Origin: Mobula hypostoma
Lineage: Eukaryota
Assembly: GCF_963921235.1 (NCBI RefSeq)
Contig: NC_086114.1
Coordinates: 63,922,001-63,986,000, forward strand
DNA length: 64,000 nt
Direction of reading: 5' to 3'
Part shown: positions 45,630 to 64,000 of the stretch, piece after piece
Layout of the letters: each line of letters begins with the position of its first letter
Position numbering within the stretch: position 1 is the stretch's first letter
Position numbers and translations under genes: made by a program
The notes under the pieces: generated by a model
Databases searched by the model: none
What the model was told of the DNA's origin: nothing
What the model saw: only the letters and a program-made list of their open reading frames with translations

Positions 45630-45993
45630 CTGTGGGGGGTGGGGGGTGGGGGGAGAGAGAAAGTACGTAACAATAACAACAAGGAATTCAGCATATGCTC
45701 ATCAGACGAGGCAGGCAGCCAACAGCTTTAAATTCCTGTATGTAACAGACTGGATGAGCAGTCCTGCACCCAGCACATAGATGCAATCATACGGAGTCTT
45801 TATTTCCTCGGGAGGTTAAAGAGGCGTAGGACAATATAACACTAAACTCAACTTTGACCAGGCAGTACATGTGACTTTTTGGGTTGGTTCCCAGATTTGA
45901 AGAACAATCAAGTTCAGAAACACGTTTTAAATTGCAAACAAAAGTGAGAGGTGCTGGGAGAGATTAAGTGACACAAACATTGACAGAGCCACC

Positions 45994-47333
45994 TGTAATG
46001 ATGGGGACTGGGGAGGTGTAGATCGAATGATGCCAGCTGTAATGATGGGGATTGGGGAGGTGTAGATCGAATGATGCCAGCTGTAATGATGGGGATTGGG
46101 GAGGTGTAGATCAGAATGATGCCAGCTGTAATGATGGGGATTGGGGAGGTGTAGATCAGAATGATGCCAGCTGTAATGATGGGGATTGGGGAGGTGTAGA
46201 TCAGAATGACGTCAGCTGTAATGATGGGGATTGGGGAGGTGTAGATCGAATGATGCCAGCTGTAATGATGGGGATTGGGGAGGTGTAGATCGAATGATGT
46301 CAGCTGTAATGATGGGGATTGGGGAGGTGTAGATCGAATGATGCCAGCTGTAATGATGGGGATTGGGGAGGTATTGATCGAATGATGCCAGCTGTAATGA
46401 TGGGGACTGGGGAGGTATTGATCAGAATGATGCCAGCTGTCATGATGGGGATTGGGGAGGTGTAGATCTGAATGATGCCAGCTATAATGATGGGGACTGG
46501 GGAGGTATTGATCAGAATGATGCCAGCTGTAATGATGGGGATTGGGGAGGTGTAGATCGAATGATGTCAGCTGTAGTGATGGGGATTGGGGAGGTATCGA
46601 TCGAATGATGCCAGCCGTAATGATGGGGACTGGGGAGGTGTAGATCGAATGATGCCAGCTGTAATGATGGGGATTGGGGAGGTGTAGATCTGAATGATGC
46701 CAGCTGTAATGATGGGGACTGGGGAGGTGTAGATCAGAATGATGCCAGCTGTAATGATGGGAGTAGGGGAGGTGTAGATCAAATGATGCCAGCTGTAATG
46801 ATGTCCAGAACGAGGGGTCACAGTTTGAGGATAGAGGGGAAGCCTTTTAGGACCGAGATTAGGAAAAACTTCTTCACACAGAGAGTGGTGAATCTGTGGA
46901 ATTCTCTGCCACAGCAAACTGTTGAGGCCAGTTCATTGGCTATGTTTAAGAGGGAGTTAGATATGGCCCTTGTGGCTACAGGGGTCAGGGGGTATGGAGG
47001 GAAGGCTGGGGCGGGGTTCTGAGTTGGATGATCAGCCATGATCATAATAAATGGCGGTGCAGGCTCGAAGGGCCGAATGGCCTACTCCTGCACCTATTTT
47101 CTATGTTTCTATGTTTCTATGTAATGATGGGGATTGGGGAGGTGTAGATCGAATGATGCCAGTTGTAATGATGGGGATTGGGGAGGTGTAGATCGAATGA
47201 TGCCAGCTGTAATGATGGGGATTGGGGAGGTGTAGATCGAATGATGCCAGCTGTAATGATGGGGATTGGGGAGGTATCGATCAGAATGATGCCAACTGTA
47301 ATGATGGGGACTGGGAGGTGTAGATCAGAATGC
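45994..47333. repeat. Minisatellite, 44/45-bp unit TGTAATGATGGGGATTGGGGAGGTGTAGATC(A)GAATGATGCCAGC, about 18 + 5 copies, split by a CR1
   Basis: Direct reading; period 44 between 46021 and 46065. Confidence 0.95.
46804..47119 (+). mobile_element. Young CR1 3' end with 10-bp TSD
   Basis: Nearly identical to 41325-41633; TSD TGTAATGATG at 46794-46803 and 47120-47129. Confidence 0.93.
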
Positions 47334-47514
47334 ATCTATGAAATCTGAAATACTGGAAAAGGAGAAAGAATTAAAACTGAAGGTCACAAACGCATGATAA
47401 AAGCCTGTAAAGAATGTTGATTTTGAAAACATTTTGCTCATTTCTGAGTACAGAAAGCTGCAATGTGCCTCTTTCTAAAGATTAGCTTTATTTGTTACAT
47501 GTACGTCGAAACAG

Positions 47515-54849: not shown

Positions 54850-57525
54850 CACAGTGCTGAGACTGGAAAATGTTGACAGGATGACAAACTATATGGGAAG
54901 TTAGAGGATTGAGAAGCTTATAAAAACTTGCAGAAGGAAACTAAGGTGGTCATTAGGAAGGAAAAGGTGAATTACAAAAGGAAGCTGGTGACTAATATCA
55001 AAGAAGATACTAAAAGCTTTTTTAAGTATATAAAGGGTAAAAGAGAGTCGAGGGTAGATATAGGACTAATATAAAATGACACTGGAGATATTGTAATGAG
55101 ATGGCTGAGGAAATGAATGTGTATTTTGCATCAGTGTTCACAGTGCAAGACATCTGCAGTACACCTGACATTCAAGAGTGTCAGGGAAGTGAAGTATGTG
55201 CAGTGAAAATTACGACTGAGAAGGTGCTCAGGAAGCTTAATGGTCTGAGGGTGGATAAATCTCCTGGACCTGATGGAATGCACCCTTGGGTTCTGAAGTA
55301 GCTGAAGAGATTGCGGAGGAATTAACAATGATCTTTCAAGAATCGATAGATTTTAGCATTGTACCGGATGACTGGAAAATTGCAAATGTTACTCCGCTAT
55401 TTAAGAAGGGCGGGAGGCAGCAGAAAGGAAACTATAGACCTGTTAGCCTGACATCAGTGGTTGGGAAGTTGTTGGAATCAATTGTTAGGGATGAGATTAC
55501 GGAGTACCTGGAGGCACATGACAAGACAGGCCAAAGCCAGCATGATTTCCTGAAAGGAAAATCCTGCTTGACTAACCTACTGCAATTTTTTTGAGGAAAT
55601 TACAAGCAGGGTAGACGAAGGATATGCAGTGGATGTGGTGTACTTGGATTTTCAGAAGACCTTTGACAAGGTGCCGCACATGAGGCTGCTTAGCAAGATA
55701 AGAGCCCATGGAATTACAGGGGAGTTACTAGCATGGGTGGAGCATTGGCTGATCGGCAGAAAACAGAGAGTGGGAATAAAGGGATCCTATCTGGCAGGCT
55801 GCTGGCTAGCAGTGGAGTTCCACAGGGGTCGGTGTTGGGACTGCCGCTTTTTACGATGTATGTCGATGATTTGGACTATGGAATTAATGGATGTGTGGCT
55901 AAATTTGCCAATGATACAAAGAAAGGTGGAGCAACGGGTAGTGTTGAGGAAACAGAGAGCCTGCAGAGAGACTTAGATAGCTTAGGGGAATGGGCAAGGA
56001 AGTGGCAAATGAAATACAGTTGGCCCTCCTTACCCGCGGGGGATTGGTTCTGGGACACCCCCACCCCCACCCCGTGGATACCAAAAAACGCAGATGCTCA
56101 AGTCCCTTATTTAACCTGTCTCAGTGCGGGTGGGCTTTAAAACCCGGGGGGAGCTGCTGCTGAATCCGCGGTGTTTCAGTTCCGTTGACGGAAAACAATC
56201 ACGATTGAAAATAAAGTGGAAGTAATAAAGTGATTGGAAAGAGGTGAAATGCCATCGGTCATTGGAAAAGTGTTAGGCTACAGTCGGTCAATGATCGGAA
56301 CAATTTTAAAGGATAAAGTGAGAATAATGGAGCATGTGAAAGGTCCTGCTCCGATGAAAGCTACAATTATTACTAAGCAACGCAGTGGTTTAATTATCGA
56401 AACACATATGTTTCTTAAGTGTTTTATACGCATAGAAAGGTAAAATATATACTATATACTCAGACAAACGTTTGACTAACTGATGCTAAATAATACCAGA
56501 TGTACCTGTTCCGATNNNNNNNNNNNNNNNNNNNNNNNNNNNNNNNNNNNNNNNNNNNNNNNNNNNNNNNNNNNNNNNNNNNNNNNNNNNNNNNNNNNNN
56601 NNNNNNNNNNNNNNNNNNNNNNNNNNNNNNNNNNNNNNNNNNNNNNNNNAAACAACGGGTGCTGGAGAGAGAACTTCCGGGTTTTTCCGATCCGCGGCTG
56701 GTTGAATCCACGCATGCGGAACCTGTGGATAAGGAGGGCCGACTGTACAATGTTGAGAAGTGTATGGTCATACACTTTGGTGGAAGAAATAAACGGGCAG
56801 ACTATTATTTAGATGGGGAGAGAATTCAAAATGCAGAGATGCAAAGGGACTTGGGAGTCCTCGTACAGGATACCCTAAAGGTTAACCTCCAGACTGAGTC
56901 GGTGGTAAAGAAGGCGAATGCAATGTTGGCATTCTTTCTAGAGTATAGAATTTAAGAGCAGGGATGTGATGTTGAGGCTCTATAGGGCACTCGTGAGACC
57001 ACACTTGGAGCATTGTGTCCAGTTTTGGGCTCCTCATTTGAGAAAGGATATACTGACATTGGAGAGGGTTCAGAGAATATTCACGAGAATGATTCCAGGA
57101 ATGAAAGGGCTACCGTATGAGAAATGTCTGGCAGCTCTTGGGGTGTATTCCCTGGGGTTCAGGAGAATGAGAGGTGAACTCATAGAAACATTCCAAATGT
57201 TAAAAGGCCTGAACAGATTAGATATGACAAAGTTATTTCCCATGGTAGGACAAGGGGGGACGACTTCAGGATTGAATGACATCCATTTAGAACAGAGATA
57301 TGGAGAAATTACTTTAGTCAGAGGATGGTAAATCTGTGGAATTTGTTGCCACAAGCGGCTGTGGAGACCAAGTCATTGGGTGTATTTAAGGCAGAGATAG
57401 ATAGTTTCCTGATTAGCCAGGGCATCGAAGGGTCTGGGGAGAAGGCAGGGGAGTGGGGATGACTGGAAGAATTGGATCAGCCCATGATCAAATGGCCTAC
57501 TTCTGCTCCTATGTCTTATGGTCTT
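54850..57525 (+). mobile_element. CR1 LINE ORF2 plus 3' UTR, interrupted by a Tigger element
   Basis: [27 protein letters not shown]; KWQMKY|NVEKC reading restored on removing the Tigger. Confidence 0.9.
56017..56745 (+). mobile_element. Pogo/Tigger-type internally deleted DNA transposon (contains a 134-N gap at 56516-56649)
   Basis: TIRs CAGTTGGCCCTCCTTA / TAAGGAGGGCCGACTG, TA TSDs; CENP-B/psq-like HTH remnant RKTITIENKVEVIK..ERGE..IGKVLGYSRSMIGTILK. Confidence 0.9.
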
Positions 57526-57620
57526 ATTTACAACAGGCGGCAGGACCAGAGCACCATGGCCCAATGTTCTCTGGGGCCTCATCCCTTTCCCCGGTCACGC
57601 CCCCCATTCCGTCCCCTTAC

Positions 57621-57933
57621 CAGTCAAGCAGGCAGAATGACTCCAGGCGGGAGAGACTCTACAGGGGGAGACACGCCGCCGCGGATTCGGCCCGGTGCCA
57701 TCGTCCGCCTCAGGCTGGGCTGCCCGTAACTCGAGGCCAGACCGGGGAGGAGGGACATCGCTCCGGTTTGGCCTCGAGTTACAGACTGTCACCTCGCGGG
57801 GCTCGAGCACCCGGTCATCTGCCTCACGTTTCACCGGGCTCCCGGGACGTTCCACGCTATTGATAGTCTGTCCAAAACGATTAAAGCCAAAGCCAAACCA
57901 ACGCCCGGTGCCGGCTGGAGCAGCGGCCGCCAT
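57621..57933 (-). CDS. RCCD1: RCCD1 exon 1 (MAAAAPAGTGRWFGFGFNRFGQ...RVSPAWSHSACLT)
   Basis: Human WFGFGFCGFGQ..RVSASWSYTAFVT; donor GTAAGG; CpG island; total CDS 1305 nt = 434 aa. Confidence 0.92.
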
Positions 57934-58033
57934 GCCCGCAGCCACTGAGTGACGGGAAAACAGACCGCCGTCAACTTGAACCTGTACGCCGCGCCATGCC
58001 TCCCGCCGTCACCGACCTCACTCCCGGCAGCCT

Positions 58034-59099
58034 GTCTGTCTGTCCGTATCTTGTTTCACGGCGGTTGGCATCCAGCTTAATGGTGCATTACCGCCACCCT
58101 CTGCTCCAGAATGTGCACTAGACATACATTCTAAATCCCTTCACCCAATCTCACACACACAAACCTACACTTCACCCTCCCATCTTTGACCATCCTAGTA
58201 TCCTATTCCTGTTTATTCGTCATATTCTATAAAAAACCCCTGTACCCCTTAAAAACGCTAAAAATACCCGGACTTGTGCTCTCTCACCCACGCCCAGCAA
58301 CCCTTTTAATGTGAATTCCTGCATCCCCAACTCCCTTAATTTATTTCTCATCATCTCTCTCTGTATCCCATACTTCCTGCAACTCAGAACTACATGTTCT
58401 ACTGACTCCTCTTCCTGACATTCCTCACACAATCCTGTCTGGTGTTTCCCTATCATTTTCAATGTTTTGTTTAATGCACAGTGCCCCAGCCTTAACCTAG
58501 TCCACACAATTTCCTCTCTTCTGTTTCCATTACCTACCCTAGTAACTGCAACACTCTTTTGTATTTGATATAAATGCCTCCCTTTCCCCTCCCTGTCCCA
58601 TCTTTCTTGCCACATTCGGTTGACTTTTTCCCAGATTACACACTTAACCTCTGCTTTACTGATACTAATGTGCAGTTCCACATTTTCTTTCTTTAACACC
58701 CTCTTTGCCAACTCATCCACCCTCTCATTCCCCTTCACCCCTACATGTGCTGGAACCCATAGAAGTTTTACCTGACCTCCCTGATTTGCAATCCTTGTAA
58801 CTAACTGAAGGACTTCATAAAGTACATCTTGCCGACTGTTTGTGTGAAAAGACCTTAAACTTGCTAGAACTGAGGATGAATCTGAACATATCAATGCTTT
58901 GACTTGTCTGGCTTTCTGCACCCATTGCAACGCAACCAACACCGCCAGCATCTCCACTGTAAACACTCCTAACTTATTAGATGTTCTTCTGCTGATTCCA
59001 ATTTCTTTTGCTGGTATTACCACCCCAAACCCTGTCACTCCTGTTTCAGGTTCCTTCGCACCATCCGTATAAATGTGAGTATAATCACTATACTTTTCC
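58034..59099 (-). mobile_element. 5'-truncated I/Nimb-clade LINE (RNase H plus CCHC knuckle), 13-bp TSD
   Basis: IYTDGAK, E-MLAV, ICSDS, WVPAHVGVKGNERVDELAK, TRLRLGH, CEECQEEESVEHVVLSC; 3' GGTGGCGGTAATGCACC hairpin and (GACA)n tail; TSD CTCCCGGCAGCCT at 58021-33 and 59100-12. Confidence 0.9.
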
Positions 59100-61019
59100 C
59101 TCCCGGCAGCCTCCGCGTGATCACGGACAATGGGAAAGTGGAACACCGGGATTCCCAGCAGTCACCACACAATGATCTCACCCCCATCGACACTTGCACG
59201 ACACTTTTTTTTCTCTCATTCATCGAAACATAATGACAAAATTAAATGGCTTTATTGGCGGACATTTAAATAATTGAGACAGCTCATTCGCTATTGGAAC
59301 GTTTATATTAATATAAATAAATATATAAAAATGACCCTTCAGCAGCAGTCCTGATGAAGGATCTCAGCCAGAAAAGTCAGACTGTTTCTCATCTCCATCC
59401 ATGCTGCTGACCTGCTGGGTTCTTGTAGCATTTTGTGCGTGTTAATCCAGAAGTGAGTGTGAACATTGCTTGCAATCCATGCAATTCCTTACTGACCCGA
59501 GTCAGGGTAGTAGGTAAGGACACCAGTGAACCAGAAACACGAGAGACTGCAGATGGTGGAATCTGCAACTGAAATATTGGAGGAACTCAGCGGATCAGAC
59601 ACACAGTGTGATGGTCGAGATTTCGGGTCGTCACGCTGCTTCAGTAATCCTACGTGTTTTTAAACACCATTACATTGCTCTGCAGTCGCTGTTTCCCAGC
59701 TATTATGTTCCTCAATGGTTCACACCCGTGGCTGCTCCATAAAACTAAGTCTGTTCAACCATTCCATCATGGCTAATTTATTATCCCTCTCAATCTCATT
59801 CTCCTTCTTTCTCCATGTAACCTGACGCCCTGAATATTGCTCAACCATTAACCTATATACATATAGACCTTTATATGTCTATATACTGTACACACATAAT
59901 CTATCTGTATCAGGTTCAAGGATGCATACACAAAAACAGTATCTCAAGATTTGATCTTTTATTATCTGAAGGAGGTGGTAATTAATCCATTGTGATCTTT
60001 AAAATACTTTTCTGTATAAAGTCCAACCCATATCATTCCCACCAGAAAGATGAAATGGGCCTTTTTAAACTTCCATATGAGTAAAAGCATTCAGCCTCTG
60101 GAGGACAAGTGCCTACCTAGAACGGCAATGAGTCATTTGGGCAATAAGATTTATTTAACATGTGGACAATAATTTCATTTTGCATTAGTGGCTTCAAGTG
60201 GGCATTAGGTTCAGGTTGCTTCCATGGGCACTCCTGCCAGCCTTAGCAGCAAATGCCTTTACAGTTCTGTTAGTGTTGGCATCAGACTGTGTGGCAACAC
60301 TTGCGGGTTGCTTCCAGCATATCCACGGGTATGCGGATTGTTAATGCAAATGCTGCATTTCACAGTATGTTTGGATGACAATTAAACCTGAATCTACACC
60401 TCCCGCTCACTATTTTTCTCTAGCTTGCACTATGAATCGGATTGTTCAAAAAACCTTAACAGTCAAATTTTCTTCATGTCACATTTCCAGCACAAAGTTC
60501 TCTGCAACCAATTAACATTATTAATATTCCCATTCAAACTGATGGGTGAAAAGCAAATACCCATTTCATACTATTTTATTTTACTTGGGTATATTTTATA
60601 TACCCGTAAATTAAATGTGCCATAAACGTCGTACAATTTAAGTACAATGGACAATTCCAAAGTTAGCAACATGGGCCCTCTGGCAATATTTTTGTTATCA
60701 CCTATATTTTGCTGGTTTTCTTGAAGGCATTGTTTTATATTTGTTCCACATATATTATAAAAGCTTCTAAGGATCTTCAATCATTGAGTATGGTTGTCTA
60801 TTGTCTTCTATTAAGTTGTTTAATAAGTGAATCTTTTTATCCTCATTATCAGATTTTTGTGTGCTAAAGTCAGTTACCAGAGTGCTCTCAGCTCCCCTGG
60901 TTATATATAATCAGGCCATATAGTAATCAGATTAATGCAGGTTGTAAACAAACAAACATTCAGTATTGAAGCTGCATTATTAAAACTATGCTAAACTGGA
61001 CATGGTTCTTCATGTAGAC

Positions 61020-61646: not shown

Positions 61647-61919
61647 CTATGGGCTCTTCCCCTCTACACTGGGTTTAATAAGTCCATACTCTACTGCTCG
61701 GTCAAGACAGTCTTTAGCAACCCCACGCACTTTGGATTTCTTCTCATCAGCATCCCTGGCCAGGGCCGACAGGATTTCCATCATCTCTGACTCCATCAGC
61801 AGGGTGGCGAGCTCCTGTTCAGCGTTCATCAGGTTGAGTGTGATGACGACTCCCCGGTGTTGCAAGTCAACATTAGGGCTCAGCACCAGCGCCTGCAGAA
61901 TCTCCAACCAGTGGCTCGT
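61647..61919 (-). CDS. UNC45A: UNC45A terminal coding exon (UCS domain end); rest of the gene lies beyond the window
   Basis: [49 protein letters not shown]; tandem upstream of RCCD1 as in human. Confidence 0.9.
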
Positions 61920-64000
61920 CTGGCGGGCAAAAAGGAACAACACGTAATTAACAAAATGCACTACATTTCATTACAGAGGAGAGATACAGATGCTGTGCCA
62001 ATCTTGTAACCTACTCTAAGATCAATCCAACCCCTCACTCCACAGAGCCCTCCATTCTACTATCATCCATGTGCCTGTCTAAGAGTATTTTCAATGTCCC
62101 TAATGTTTCTGCCTCTACCACCATCCCTGGCACCCAACACTCTGCACCCACCTATCTCTGACACCTCCCACCTATACGTTCCTCCTCATTATAGCCTCTC
62201 ATATTAGCCATTGCCACCTGGACAAAGTCCTTGGTTGTCCTCTCTATCTGTGCCTCTTATCATCTTGTACACCTCTAACAAGTTATCTCTCATCCTCCTC
62301 CACTCCAAAGAGAAAAGCCTGAGCTCGCTCAACCTATCCTCATGAGTCATGCTGTCTAATCCAGGCAGCATCCTGAGAAATTTGCTCTGCACCCTCTGAG
62401 TGTAAACAGAATGCTGCCAGTTACTTCTCCTCACCTGGGTATTGACATTTGCTGCTTGGCAAGGACCATTCACCATCTGCAAGCCCTTCAGCGACAGAAT
62501 GGCCAACTCTGCCGTCTGATAAGGTCATGGCTGTTTGTTTTCTACAGCACCCCATCCCTGTACTAATTATATCCCTTAATACCAGGGTGTCCCTCGTCCT
62601 CCTGGCAGGGAATTGAAAAGGAACTTTGTGGGGGATGAAACTTCTTTTCATCTCTGTCCAGAATGGCCAACCCCGTGCTTTGTGACTGCTCACTGTTGGT
62701 GTATCACCTGAAACAGTATTTTTTTGGTAGTTCCTCCCCACCACTGCCACCTTTTCCTCTCTCTTTGTCTGCCTCTATCATTTACTTGCCACAGTTTTCC
62801 AGTTCCAATCCCTCCTAGCACTACCTACTTTCCTCAGTCCACCAATCACCTCAGAGTCCTTTCCCACCACTCCCCTTCTCCCCTCTGTGCTGCTCATCTC
62901 CCCTCTCCACTCTCAGTCCTGATCAGGGGTTTCAACCCAAAACACCAACAACTTATTTTTCCCCCCACCAGTAACGCTCGACCCACTGATTTCCACCAGA
63001 AAATTGTGTGTTGCTCATCTTTTATTTAAACTTTCTGTTGACTCTCCACTCCAAGTAGATTGTTAAATGTTTCTCCTATTTATCCACAACTAAAGAAGCT
63101 CATCTTGGTACTACTCCAGTAAATGTCATCAGCAACTTCTCTGAGACATTGGTGATATCGTAGGATGGTATTGTGGCTTGCGTTTATGAACTGTGGACTT
63201 TTTCAGACTTATGGTTTTTATATTCTGTGTTTTTTTTTAAATCACCTGTTCCTTTTCTGTTTTGTTGTGTAAGGGGGCTGTTTGGGGATTGATATTCAGC
63301 TGTGTTCTCAGTTTTTTGTTCCAGGATTGTTGTGTTTTTTTTGGGGTGGGGGGTTGATGTTCCTGTTCTGTTTTGTGTGGAGGGGGTTTTTTGGTGGGTT
63401 GATGATTGGGATGCCGTACTTTTTTGTATGGGGGAGGGTTTGATGTTTCTCTCCGAATGATTTTTGTGTTCTTTCTTTGTTTCGTGGCTATCTGGAGAAT
63501 ACAACATTTCAGAGTTGTATATGGATACACACTTTAATAATAAATGAACCTTTGAACCTTAAAACCTTCCAGAGTTAAACACTGATCCAGCCGGAGATTA
63601 ATGTATAACCTGCATGTTTTGTGTTCCATTAATAAATAGATAGGGCTGTGCATTAACTATCAGGAATGTAGTGTTTTATATATAAACTGTAGCTTTCCCA
63701 TCCCATTTCAGATCTTCAAAAGTTGGCAGCTCAGCCCTGCTGCCTGTCCAGGGTTTCCTTTTAAATTTAAAGCCCTGCCCTGTGGCTTCTCCAGGAAATG
63801 AAGGGATTTTACAACTTACTCAGCAGATAAGATACTACAAATAAAAGAAACAGGAACACAAAGACAGGGTTTAATCCTCACCTACAGAACAGATTTACCA
63901 GTAGGAAGCTAACTCAACAGGTCTCCACTTTAGTTCAGGATAGAGTCAGCACATACAGATGACATTGGAATTGAACTCTGAACTCTAGGACGCTCTGGGC

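What the first reader, a model, noticed from the sequence alone, without database searches (positions are those of the whole stretch)
58021..59165. Young RNase H-coding LINE inserted into the RCCD1 core promoter/5' UTR, in sense, with an uninterrupted ORF
Seen: a perfect 13-bp TSD places a 1066-bp element 100 bp upstream of the RCCD1 ATG. It displaces the remaining CpG segment (59100-59200, with ZNF143-like TTCCCAGCAG and TTTCCCATTG motifs) by 1 kb. The 5' truncation falls just before the first catalytic Asp, so the whole RNase H domain plus zinc knuckle is retained without stops. The frame stays open into host sequence, with CTG/GTG near-cognate starts at 59161-59144 but no ATG before the first Asp. 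Inference: if transcription starts upstream, RCCD1 mRNA carries a large uORF or a stand-alone RNase H; otherwise the promoter has been rewired. RCCD1 is a conserved housekeeping gene, so tolerance of this insertion is surprising. It may be a rare allele or an early exaptation.
Basis: partly seen in the sequence, partly recalled or inferred. Interest (0 to 1): 0.72.

Follow-up and report, generated by a model that had tools for sequence, protein, structure and literature searches.

The report
Young LINE fragment in RCCD1 promoter
A 1 kb tail fragment of a jumping gene (an RNase H-coding LINE) landed about 100 bases upstream of the RCCD1 start codon in this ray lineage but not in a close relative; the gene is still expressed from a start below the insert, so this looks like a tolerated promoter insertion and not a new function.

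Summary
A perfect 13-bp target-site duplication (58021-58033 and 59100-59112) brackets a 1066-bp, 5'-truncated LINE on the minus strand. It lies 100 bp upstream of the RCCD1 ATG (57933-57931) and about 140 bp downstream of the UNC45A poly(A) signal.

The fragment is the C-terminal ~290 codons of a ~1250-aa APE-RT-RNase H ORF2, with every RNase H catalytic residue and a CCHC knuckle, plus a 186-nt 3' UTR and an (ACAG)n tail.

A DNA contig of a closely related organism (B) joins 58033 directly to about 59113 with one copy of the target. That is a clean empty site, so the insertion is specific to this lineage.

RNA contigs do not support the functional reading. In the carrier, the RCCD1 mRNA contig ends at 57938. 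Nothing covers 57948-58028 or the upstream junction, so no LINE-RCCD1 chimeric RNA, large uORF or stand-alone RNase H is seen.

In B, which lacks the insert, the mRNA contig reaches 58010, 23 nt from the insertion point. The insertion may therefore have pushed initiation downstream onto a TISU-like ATGGCGGC start.

This is an ordinary young TE insertion of low interest. The scan's notes list other Nimb-type LINEs at promoters in this genome; I could not test that lead.

The parts
58021..58033 (.). Target-site duplication, copy next to the LINE 3' end (RCCD1 side)
   Evidence: Identical 13-mer at 59100-59112, and only these two occurrences in the window. The organism B contig holds one copy only.
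58034..59099 (-). 5'-truncated I-group (Nimb/I-like) LINE, 1066 bp
   Evidence: Homologs are C-termini of ~1250-aa ORF2s with APE, RT and RNase H. It is absent from organism B DNA. The family is very abundant in DNA and RNA contigs.
58034..58046 (-). LINE 3' terminal microsatellite tail, (ACAG)n-like
   Evidence: The minus strand reads ...GATACGGACAGACAGAC directly before the TSD.
58034..58219 (-). LINE 3' UTR, with AATAAA at 58217-58212 and a (TG)n run near 58150-58162
   Evidence: Sequence and motif scan.
58220..59099 (-). Remaining ORF2 coding part (about 293 codons plus stop), uninterrupted
   Evidence: ORF list and translation. Alignments with homologs run from query residue 15-17 to the natural C-terminus.
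58697..59080 (-). RNase H domain with D28, E65, D89, H134 and D144 intact
   Evidence: Pfam PF00075 at 2.3e-15, alignment to HIV-1 RNase H, coordinates.
58379..58429 (-). CX2CX7HX4C zinc knuckle downstream of RNase H
   Evidence: Pattern match at residues 240-256, with weak Pfam zf-RVT.
59100..59112 (.). Target-site duplication, copy at the truncated 5' end (UNC45A side)
59113..59250 (-). Displaced upstream part of the RCCD1 promoter / UNC45A-RCCD1 intergenic CpG segment
   Evidence: CpG o/e 1.0. No RNA contig lies here in either species. 59130-59168 shows no A/B differences while its neighbours do.
59251..59256 (-). AATAAA of the upstream gene (UNC45A-type); an RNA contig ends at 59249
   Evidence: Motif scan. 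X9 record 31 covers 59249-59700. The last coding exon 61647-61961 matches the UNC-45 C-terminus at 6e-18.
57934..58020 (-). Retained proximal promoter / ancestral 5' UTR, holding an uATG at 57997-57995 (8-codon uORF)
   Evidence: The organism B RNA contig reaches 58010 and the organism A RNA contig ends at 57938. uATG.
57621..57938 (-). RCCD1 exon 1 as covered by the carrier's mRNA contig (ATG 57933-57931 in a GGGCATGGCGGC context; donor at 57621)
   Evidence: X9 record 27 has 0 mismatches. ORF. Downstream exons carry RCC1 repeats.

Best explanation
This is a recent, lineage-specific retrotransposition. An I-group (Nimb/I-like) LINE RNA was reverse-transcribed from a nick in the plus strand at ...GCAGCCT^CCGCG. 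That site lies inside the ~240-bp gap between the UNC45A poly(A) site and the RCCD1 start codon. Reverse transcription stopped early, leaving only the last 1066 nt: RNase H, zinc knuckle, 3' UTR and (ACAG)n tail. Second-strand cleavage 13 bp away produced the duplication.

The open reading frame is intact because the copy is young, not because it is used. RCCD1 is still transcribed and spliced in the carrier, from a start downstream of the insert and close to the ATG, which sits in a TISU/YY1-like ATGGCGGC context. The LINE therefore lies in the proximal promoter, not in the mRNA.

Shown: the insertion, the empty site in a relative, the domain content, and the extent of the RNA contigs.
Inferred: the TPRT steps, the downstream shift of initiation relative to the insert-free relative (I put this at about 50%), and neutrality.
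For: - Insertion: a perfect 13-bp TSD that is unique in the window.
- Element identity: the ORF is RNase H with intact catalytic residues. Homologs align from residue 15-17 to the natural end of ~1250-aa APE-RT-RNase H proteins such as P0006 and P0031.
- Junctions in the carrier: organism A DNA contigs cross the 3' junction (57506-58075, 42 nt into the LINE) and the 5' junction (59070-59700, 30 nt into the LINE) with 0 mismatches.
- Empty site: organism B DNA record 17 aligns 57504-58033, then 59130-59695, with 18 record letters between them against 17 window letters at 59113-59129. That is one TSD copy and no LINE.
- RNA in A: contig record 27 (3212 nt, depth 394) covers 57621-57938, and depth is 0 at 57948-58028 and 59163-59243. 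Three organism A RNA runs hold 0.63 of the words of 57595-58060, which fits an end near 57940.
- RNA in B: the contig reaches 58010, and four runs hold 0.65-0.67 of the words.
- TISU elements mark very short 5' UTRs (median 12 nt) and are YY1 sites (PMC2518114).
Against: - All RNA and DNA evidence comes from assembled contigs, which cannot show true transcript starts and which drop rare variants. The tool itself warns that a hole proves nothing.
- The organism A DNA sample may be the one the window was assembled from, so its junction support is not independent. The 5' junction piece has 30 LINE letters, one short of the tool's 31-letter bridging rule.
- Zygosity and population frequency are unknown.
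- Copy-specific transcription of the LINE cannot be excluded, because family RNA is abundant and copy-specific letters are lost in contigs.
- The TISU match covers only the ATGGCGGC core; positions -2 and -3 are G, not A.
Confidence: 0.85

Rival explanations
1. The insertion rewired the promoter. It landed at or within about 25 nt of the ancestral RCCD1 start site, separated that site from its upstream elements (59113-59250), and moved initiation to a downstream TISU-like start. This shortened the 5' UTR and removed the 8-codon uORF (uATG 57997-57995) from the mRNA.
For: The insert-free organism B mRNA contig reaches 58010, although its depth is eight times lower. The carrier's contig stops at 57938. 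The word shares of three A runs and four B runs agree with this. The uATG comes and the properties of TISU from PMC2518114.
Against: Contig ends are not transcription starts. The tissues of the runs are unknown and may differ. The difference might predate the insertion or reflect other A/B substitutions. No reporter or CAGE data exist.
Confidence: 0.4
2. The LINE lies inside the RCCD1 5' UTR. Transcripts start upstream at 59113-59250 and carry the RNase H frame as a large uORF or as a translated stand-alone RNase H.
For: The frame is open from 59161 with CTG and GTG codons, and all catalytic residues are intact. The upstream CpG segment is retained.
Against: No RNA contig bridges either junction, and there is zero RNA depth at 57948-58028 and 59163-59243 while exon 1 has depth 394. 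There is no ATG before the first Asp. AATAAA and ATTAAA signals lie inside the element in sense, at 58217-58212, 58345-58340, 58310-58305 and 58475-58470. The element is absent from the relative, so nothing is conserved.
Confidence: 0.05
3. The difference between the two organisms is a precise deletion in organism B, or the junctions are an assembly artefact in the window, and there was no new insertion in A.
For: The organism A DNA runs may be the assembly's own source, so they are not independent.
Against: The B contig keeps exactly one copy of the 13-mer, which is the signature of an unoccupied target and not of a deletion. The TSD, the 5' truncation, the natural 3' end and the tail are all as expected for target-primed reverse transcription. 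The A contigs cross both junctions without mismatches.
Confidence: 0.03

Closest known systems
5'-truncated LINE insertions made by target-primed reverse transcription (for example de novo L1 insertions in mammalian genes and promoters)
   Same: It has a target-site duplication, a dead-on-arrival 5' truncation, a complete 3' end, an empty site in a relative, and sits near a gene start.
   Different: The parent element is not L1. Its ORF2 carries RNase H after RT, and the tail is a short (ACAG)n microsatellite, not poly(A).
I-group non-LTR retrotransposons (clades I, Nimb, Ingi, LOA, R1, Tad1, Loner, Outcast), listed as the RNase H-bearing LINE clades in PMC4640811
   Same: Full-length homologs have the order APE, RT, RNase H, and a CCHC knuckle follows RNase H.
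   Different: Clade placement by RT phylogeny was not done, because this copy has no RT. 'Nimb' is the label used in the scan's other notes and was not tested here.
TE-derived promoters, 5' UTR exons and uORFs (exapted LTR or LINE sequences in host mRNAs)
   Same: A TE lies in sense orientation directly upstream of a host first exon.
   Different: No chimeric RNA was seen, the element is not conserved beyond this lineage, and the host mRNA contig starts downstream of the TE.
TISU / YY1-type core promoters with very short 5' UTRs (PMC2518114)
   Same: The start codon sits in ATGGCGGC, and the carrier's mRNA contig begins only 5 nt upstream of it.
   Different: Positions -3 and -2 are G/G, not A/A. 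The start site and YY1 binding are untested, and the insert-free relative appears to use a longer leader.

Membership tests
LINE insertion by target-primed reverse transcription | Flanking target-site duplication | tested here: met
   A perfect 13-bp repeat lies exactly at both ends and is unique in the window.
LINE insertion by target-primed reverse transcription | Complete 3' end with tail and variable 5' truncation | tested here: met
   Alignment to ~1250-aa ORF2s starts near their residue 960 and runs to the natural stop. A 3' UTR and an (ACAG)n tail follow.
LINE insertion by target-primed reverse transcription | Unoccupied target with a single copy of the duplicated sequence in a relative | tested here: met
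   Organism B DNA contig record 17 joins 58033 to about 59113.
I-group (Nimb/I-like) LINE | ORF2 with APE, RT and a downstream RNase H | tested here: met
   Pfam finds Exo_endo_phos, RVT_1 and RNase_H in that order in P0006, P0031 and P0048. PMC4640811 lists the RNase H-bearing clades.
I-group (Nimb/I-like) LINE | Placement of the RT domain inside a named clade (Nimb, I or another) in a phylogeny with reference elements | not tested
   No reference RT set was available in the tools, and this copy lacks RT.
Type 1 RNase H domain | Catalytic D-E-D-(H)-D residues | tested here: met
   D28, E65, D89, H134 and D144 align with HIV-1 RNase H D443, E478, D498, H539 and D549 (the HIV numbering is from my own knowledge).
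Exapted TE (TE-derived 5' UTR, uORF or protein) | Host transcripts that contain the TE sequence | tested here: not met
   No RNA contig bridges either junction, and RNA depth is 0 in the unique flanks 57948-58028 and 59163-59243. This is contig evidence only.
Exapted TE (TE-derived 5' UTR, uORF or protein) | Retention across species, or signs of selection | tested here: not met
   The element is absent from organism B. dN/dS was not computed, and no family consensus was built.
TISU core promoter element | SAASATGGCGGC around the start codon, within about 30 nt of the TSS | tested here: inconclusive
   The ATGGCGGC core is present and -3/-2 are G/G. The mRNA contig ends 5 nt upstream of the ATG. 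The true TSS is not known.

The most novel reading that the evidence does not exclude
The RNase H-bearing Nimb/I-type LINEs of this ray genome may integrate preferentially at active Pol II start sites or CpG-island promoters, in sense orientation. This copy landed no more than about 25 nt from the farthest 5' reach of the RCCD1 mRNA in the insert-free relative. The scan's unchecked notes list similar cases at NUDT13, a zinc-finger gene's first exon, a stefin start site and histone genes. Under this reading the host tolerated the hit by shifting initiation to a downstream TISU-like start.
Probability: 0.12. Interest if true: 0.65.

Novelty: new member of a known kind. Interest (0 to 1): 0.22.

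Why it matters
This case cleanly documents, with both the filled and the empty site, a recent LINE insertion into the very short promoter of a housekeeping-type gene that stays expressed. That makes it useful as a natural experiment on promoter robustness. If the assembled 5' ends reflect real start sites, it gives a carrier versus non-carrier pair for asking how a core promoter responds when its upstream 140 bp are moved 1 kb away. It does not reveal a new gene, a new RNA or a new mechanism. A wider question, whether this LINE family prefers promoters, would matter more, but it needs a genome-wide test.

Tried and rejected
- Other copies in the window: blastn and tblastn of the element and its ORF against the window found no second copy, so no in-window family comparison was possible.
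- Rfam: a scan of 57000-60000 gave only a chance match to the bacterial RsmY RNA (25 bits against a gathering score of 57), which I rejected.
- Close relatives: the search for homologous proteins gave no relative above 74% identity. The carrier's own family copies are therefore not in that collection, and I could not analyse target sites, TSDs or dN/dS at family level.
- Literature: a search for Nimb-type LINEs in sharks, skates and rays returned nothing relevant; the single 'nimb' hit was a journal DOI.
- ZNF143-like motifs: only a TTCCCA core matches the site as I recall it, no motif tool is available, and I do not rely on them.
- Alternative acceptor: I considered that the carrier's RNA contig ends at 57938 because of a 3' splice acceptor (AG at 57946-57945). 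The position is off by 6 nt and there is no upstream contig, so I dropped this.
- Copy-specific letters (58291, 58675, 58765 and others): I tried them as a test of whether this copy is transcribed. Even the carrier's DNA contigs lack these letters, so contigs have no power here.
- 13-mer null: the window-wide count of repeated 13-mers (2434) is inflated by repeats and is not a useful null. Mononucleotide shuffles give about 5 per window.

Full report
**What is in the sequence**

The 13-mer CTCCCGGCAGCCT occurs only twice in the window, at 58021-58033 and 59100-59112. The 1066 bp between the two copies (58034-59099) are CpG-poor. The flanks on both sides are CpG-rich, with observed/expected CpG about 1.0 at 57700-58099 and at 59100-59299.

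On the minus strand the insert ends in ...GATACGGACAGACAGAC directly before the repeat. It carries an ORF at 59146-58220 that matches Pfam RNase_H at E = 2.3e-15.

The alignment to HIV-1 RNase H places D28, E65, D89, H134 and D144 at the catalytic positions. A CX2CX7HX4C knuckle follows at residues 240-256.

The frame stays open into host DNA up to the stop at 59164-59162, with CTG codons at 59161 and 59158 and GTG at 59146. The first Met is residue 66, after the first catalytic Asp. The 'ZNF143-like' motifs are the exception: they share only a TTCCCA core with the site as I remember it, and I could not test them.

**What the element is**

An exhaustive HMMER search found 15,492 relatives. The long ones are about 1250 aa (P0006, P0031, P0048) and have the order APE endonuclease, reverse transcriptase, RNase H.

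The window's ORF aligns from its residue 15-17 to their natural C-terminus. In P0006, for example, the matching residues are 962-1248 of 1251. The copy is therefore the 3'-terminal fifth of an I-group LINE: RNase H, knuckle, a 186-nt 3' UTR and a microsatellite tail.

[quoted passage not shown] I did not place the family in a named clade, because this copy has no RT and no reference set was at hand. 'Nimb' is the label used by other notes of this scan.

There is no second copy in the window. The best relatives in the 90%-clustered protein collection are at most 74% identical.

**Gene context**

Minus-strand exon 1 begins MAAAAPAGTGRWFGFGFNRFGQ at ATG 57933-57931, with a splice donor at 57621. 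Downstream minus-strand exons carry RCC1 repeats.

Upstream on the same strand, 61647-61961 encodes the C-terminus of an UNC-45 protein (E = 6e-18 to Drosophila UNC-45). An AATAAA lies at 59256-59251, and an RNA contig ends at 59249.

The order UNC45A then RCCD1 on one strand is the human arrangement as I recall it. I accept the RCCD1 assignment on that basis and on the RCC1 repeats.

Without the LINE, only about 240 bp separate the UNC45A poly(A) signal from the RCCD1 ATG. The LINE sits in the middle of this very compact promoter.

**Insertion in this lineage, empty site in a relative**

I laid contigs of four public runs on 57300-59700.

- Organism A DNA (probably the assembly's own sample, so not independent) has contigs covering 57506-58075 and 59070-59700 with no mismatch. 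They cross the 3' junction by 42 nt and the 5' junction by 30 nt. The latter is one short of the tool's 31-letter rule.
- Organism B DNA has one 1220-nt contig whose letters 1-530 align to 57504-58033 and whose letters 549-1116 align to 59130-59695. The 18 letters between them correspond to the 17 window letters at 59113-59129.

B therefore has one copy of the 13-mer and no LINE, which is a clean unoccupied target. The flanks differ by 7 of 530 and 21 of 566 positions, so B is a close but distinct taxon.

An earlier follow-up note of the scan calls this genome the lesser devil ray. I did not verify that.

The LINE family is very abundant in both organisms. Summed contig depth is about 1e5 over the element against 6-8 in the unique flanks, and thousands of contigs are at least 99% alike.

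**Transcripts**

In organism A RNA (run X9), a 3212-nt contig at depth 394 covers 57621-57938 without a mismatch and ends there, 5 nt upstream of the ATG. RNA depth is 0 at 57948-58028 and at 59163-59243.

Three organism A RNA runs hold 0.63 of the sampled words of 57595-58060. That is the share expected for coverage from 57621 to about 57940, not to 58010.

In organism B RNA (run X10), a 1024-nt contig at depth 47 covers 57621-58010. Four B runs hold 0.65-0.67 of the words despite five mismatches.

No contig in either species joins LINE sequence to exon 1 or to the upstream flank. LINE-family RNA contigs are plentiful but cannot be assigned to this copy. At the copy-specific positions (58291, 58675, 58765, 58793, 58943, 58967) even the carrier's DNA contigs show only the family's letter, so contigs have no power there.

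**How it most likely works**

The anatomy is that of target-primed reverse transcription:
- a nick in the plus strand after ...GCAGCCT;
- priming on the (GACA)n end of the LINE RNA;
- an early stop of cDNA synthesis;
- second-strand cleavage 13 bp away.

The uninterrupted frame is what a young dead-on-arrival copy looks like. It needs no selection to explain it.

The gene remains expressed and spliced in the carrier, and its mRNA as assembled begins downstream of the insert. The start codon sits in GGGCATGGCGGC, whose ATGGCGGC core is that of the TISU element. TISU is a YY1-type site within 30 nt of the start site in genes whose 5' UTRs have a median length of 12 nt (PMC2518114).

I therefore think that a core promoter close to the ATG survives intact below the insertion. 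That would explain why the insertion is tolerated.

The insert-free relative's mRNA contig extends at least 72 nt further, although its depth is eight times lower. It ends 23 nt from the insertion point. The insertion may therefore have abolished or displaced an upstream start and removed the 8-codon uORF (uATG 57997-57995) from the leader. I put this at roughly 40-50%, because contig ends are not start sites.

**Why the functional readings fail**

- A large uORF or a stand-alone RNase H needs transcripts that enter the LINE from 59113-59250. No RNA contig lies there.
- The sense strand of the element contains AATAAA at 58217-58212 and 58345-58340, and ATTAAA at 58310-58305 and 58475-58470. 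These would tend to end such transcripts before they reach RCCD1.
- No ATG precedes the first catalytic Asp.
- Nothing is conserved, because the relative lacks the element.

**Comparison and novelty**

This is a new instance of a well-known kind of event. Two things add mild interest: the filled/empty pair at a 240-bp housekeeping promoter, and the possible start-site shift.

A more novel idea comes from the scan's own unchecked notes. They report Nimb-type LINEs in sense orientation at the following places:
- the NUDT13 promoter (s1-143834);
- the first exon of a zinc-finger gene (s1-143919);
- a stefin start site (s1-144027);
- histone genes (s1-144161, s1-143403).

Another note reports a hAT element 57 bp upstream of the VPS33B ATG, 90 kb away (s1-142767).

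These notes could reflect a promoter preference, general accessibility of germline-open promoters, or simply what readers find worth reporting. I could not test this, because the protein collection holds no close copies of the family and no other part of the genome can be read with these tools.

**Limits**

- All read evidence comes from contigs.
- Read laying could be called only once, so organisms C, D and H, which also hold parts of the stretch, were not examined.
- Zygosity in the carrier is unknown. No empty-site contig was listed for organism A, but the tables are truncated.

Noticed in passing
window 57300-57527 (+ strand), continuing from the ORF at 56966-57331: RCCD1 intron 1 holds the 3' end of a CR1-like LINE (RT C-terminal motif ...[17 protein letters not shown]...). 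It belongs to an extremely abundant repeat: summed contig depth is about 1.3 million against 6-8 for unique DNA, and hundreds of contigs end at 57524-57527, the element's 3' end.
   Followed up: partly
window 45900-47340 (- strand frames): A long tandem array inside an RCCD1 intron reads in several frames as repeats of ...PNPHHYSWHHSDLHL.../...PIPIITAGIIRSTPPQSPSLQLASFDLHL..., giving an open frame of up to 310 codons. It is probably a minisatellite and not coding sequence.
   Followed up: no
window 59325-59650: A moderately repeated element lies inside the presumed UNC45A 3' UTR (summed depth 1e3 to 2.5e4). Some contigs join it to the 57527 repeat end, so the two repeat types lie side by side elsewhere in the genome.
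   Followed up: no
window 59130-59168 against 59113-59129 and 59169-59306: Between organisms A and B, a 39-bp block upstream of the insertion site has no differences. The 17 bp next to the target could not be aligned, and the next 140 bp carry 10 differences. This may be a conserved promoter element, but the numbers are too small to be significant.
   Followed up: no
window 57997-57971 (- strand): An upstream ATG opens an 8-codon uORF (ATG GCG CGG CGT ACA GGT TCA AGT TGA). It lies inside the leader that organism B transcribes, and outside the carrier's assembled mRNA.
   Followed up: partly
window 58034-59099, RNA runs X9 and X10: RNA contigs of this LINE family are abundant in both organisms. 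One example is a 136-nt contig identical to 58345-58480 at depth 439. Together with the thousands of DNA contigs at least 99% alike, this suggests the family was active recently.
   Followed up: partly
window 56516-56649: A run of 134 N lies in RCCD1 intron 1.
   Followed up: no
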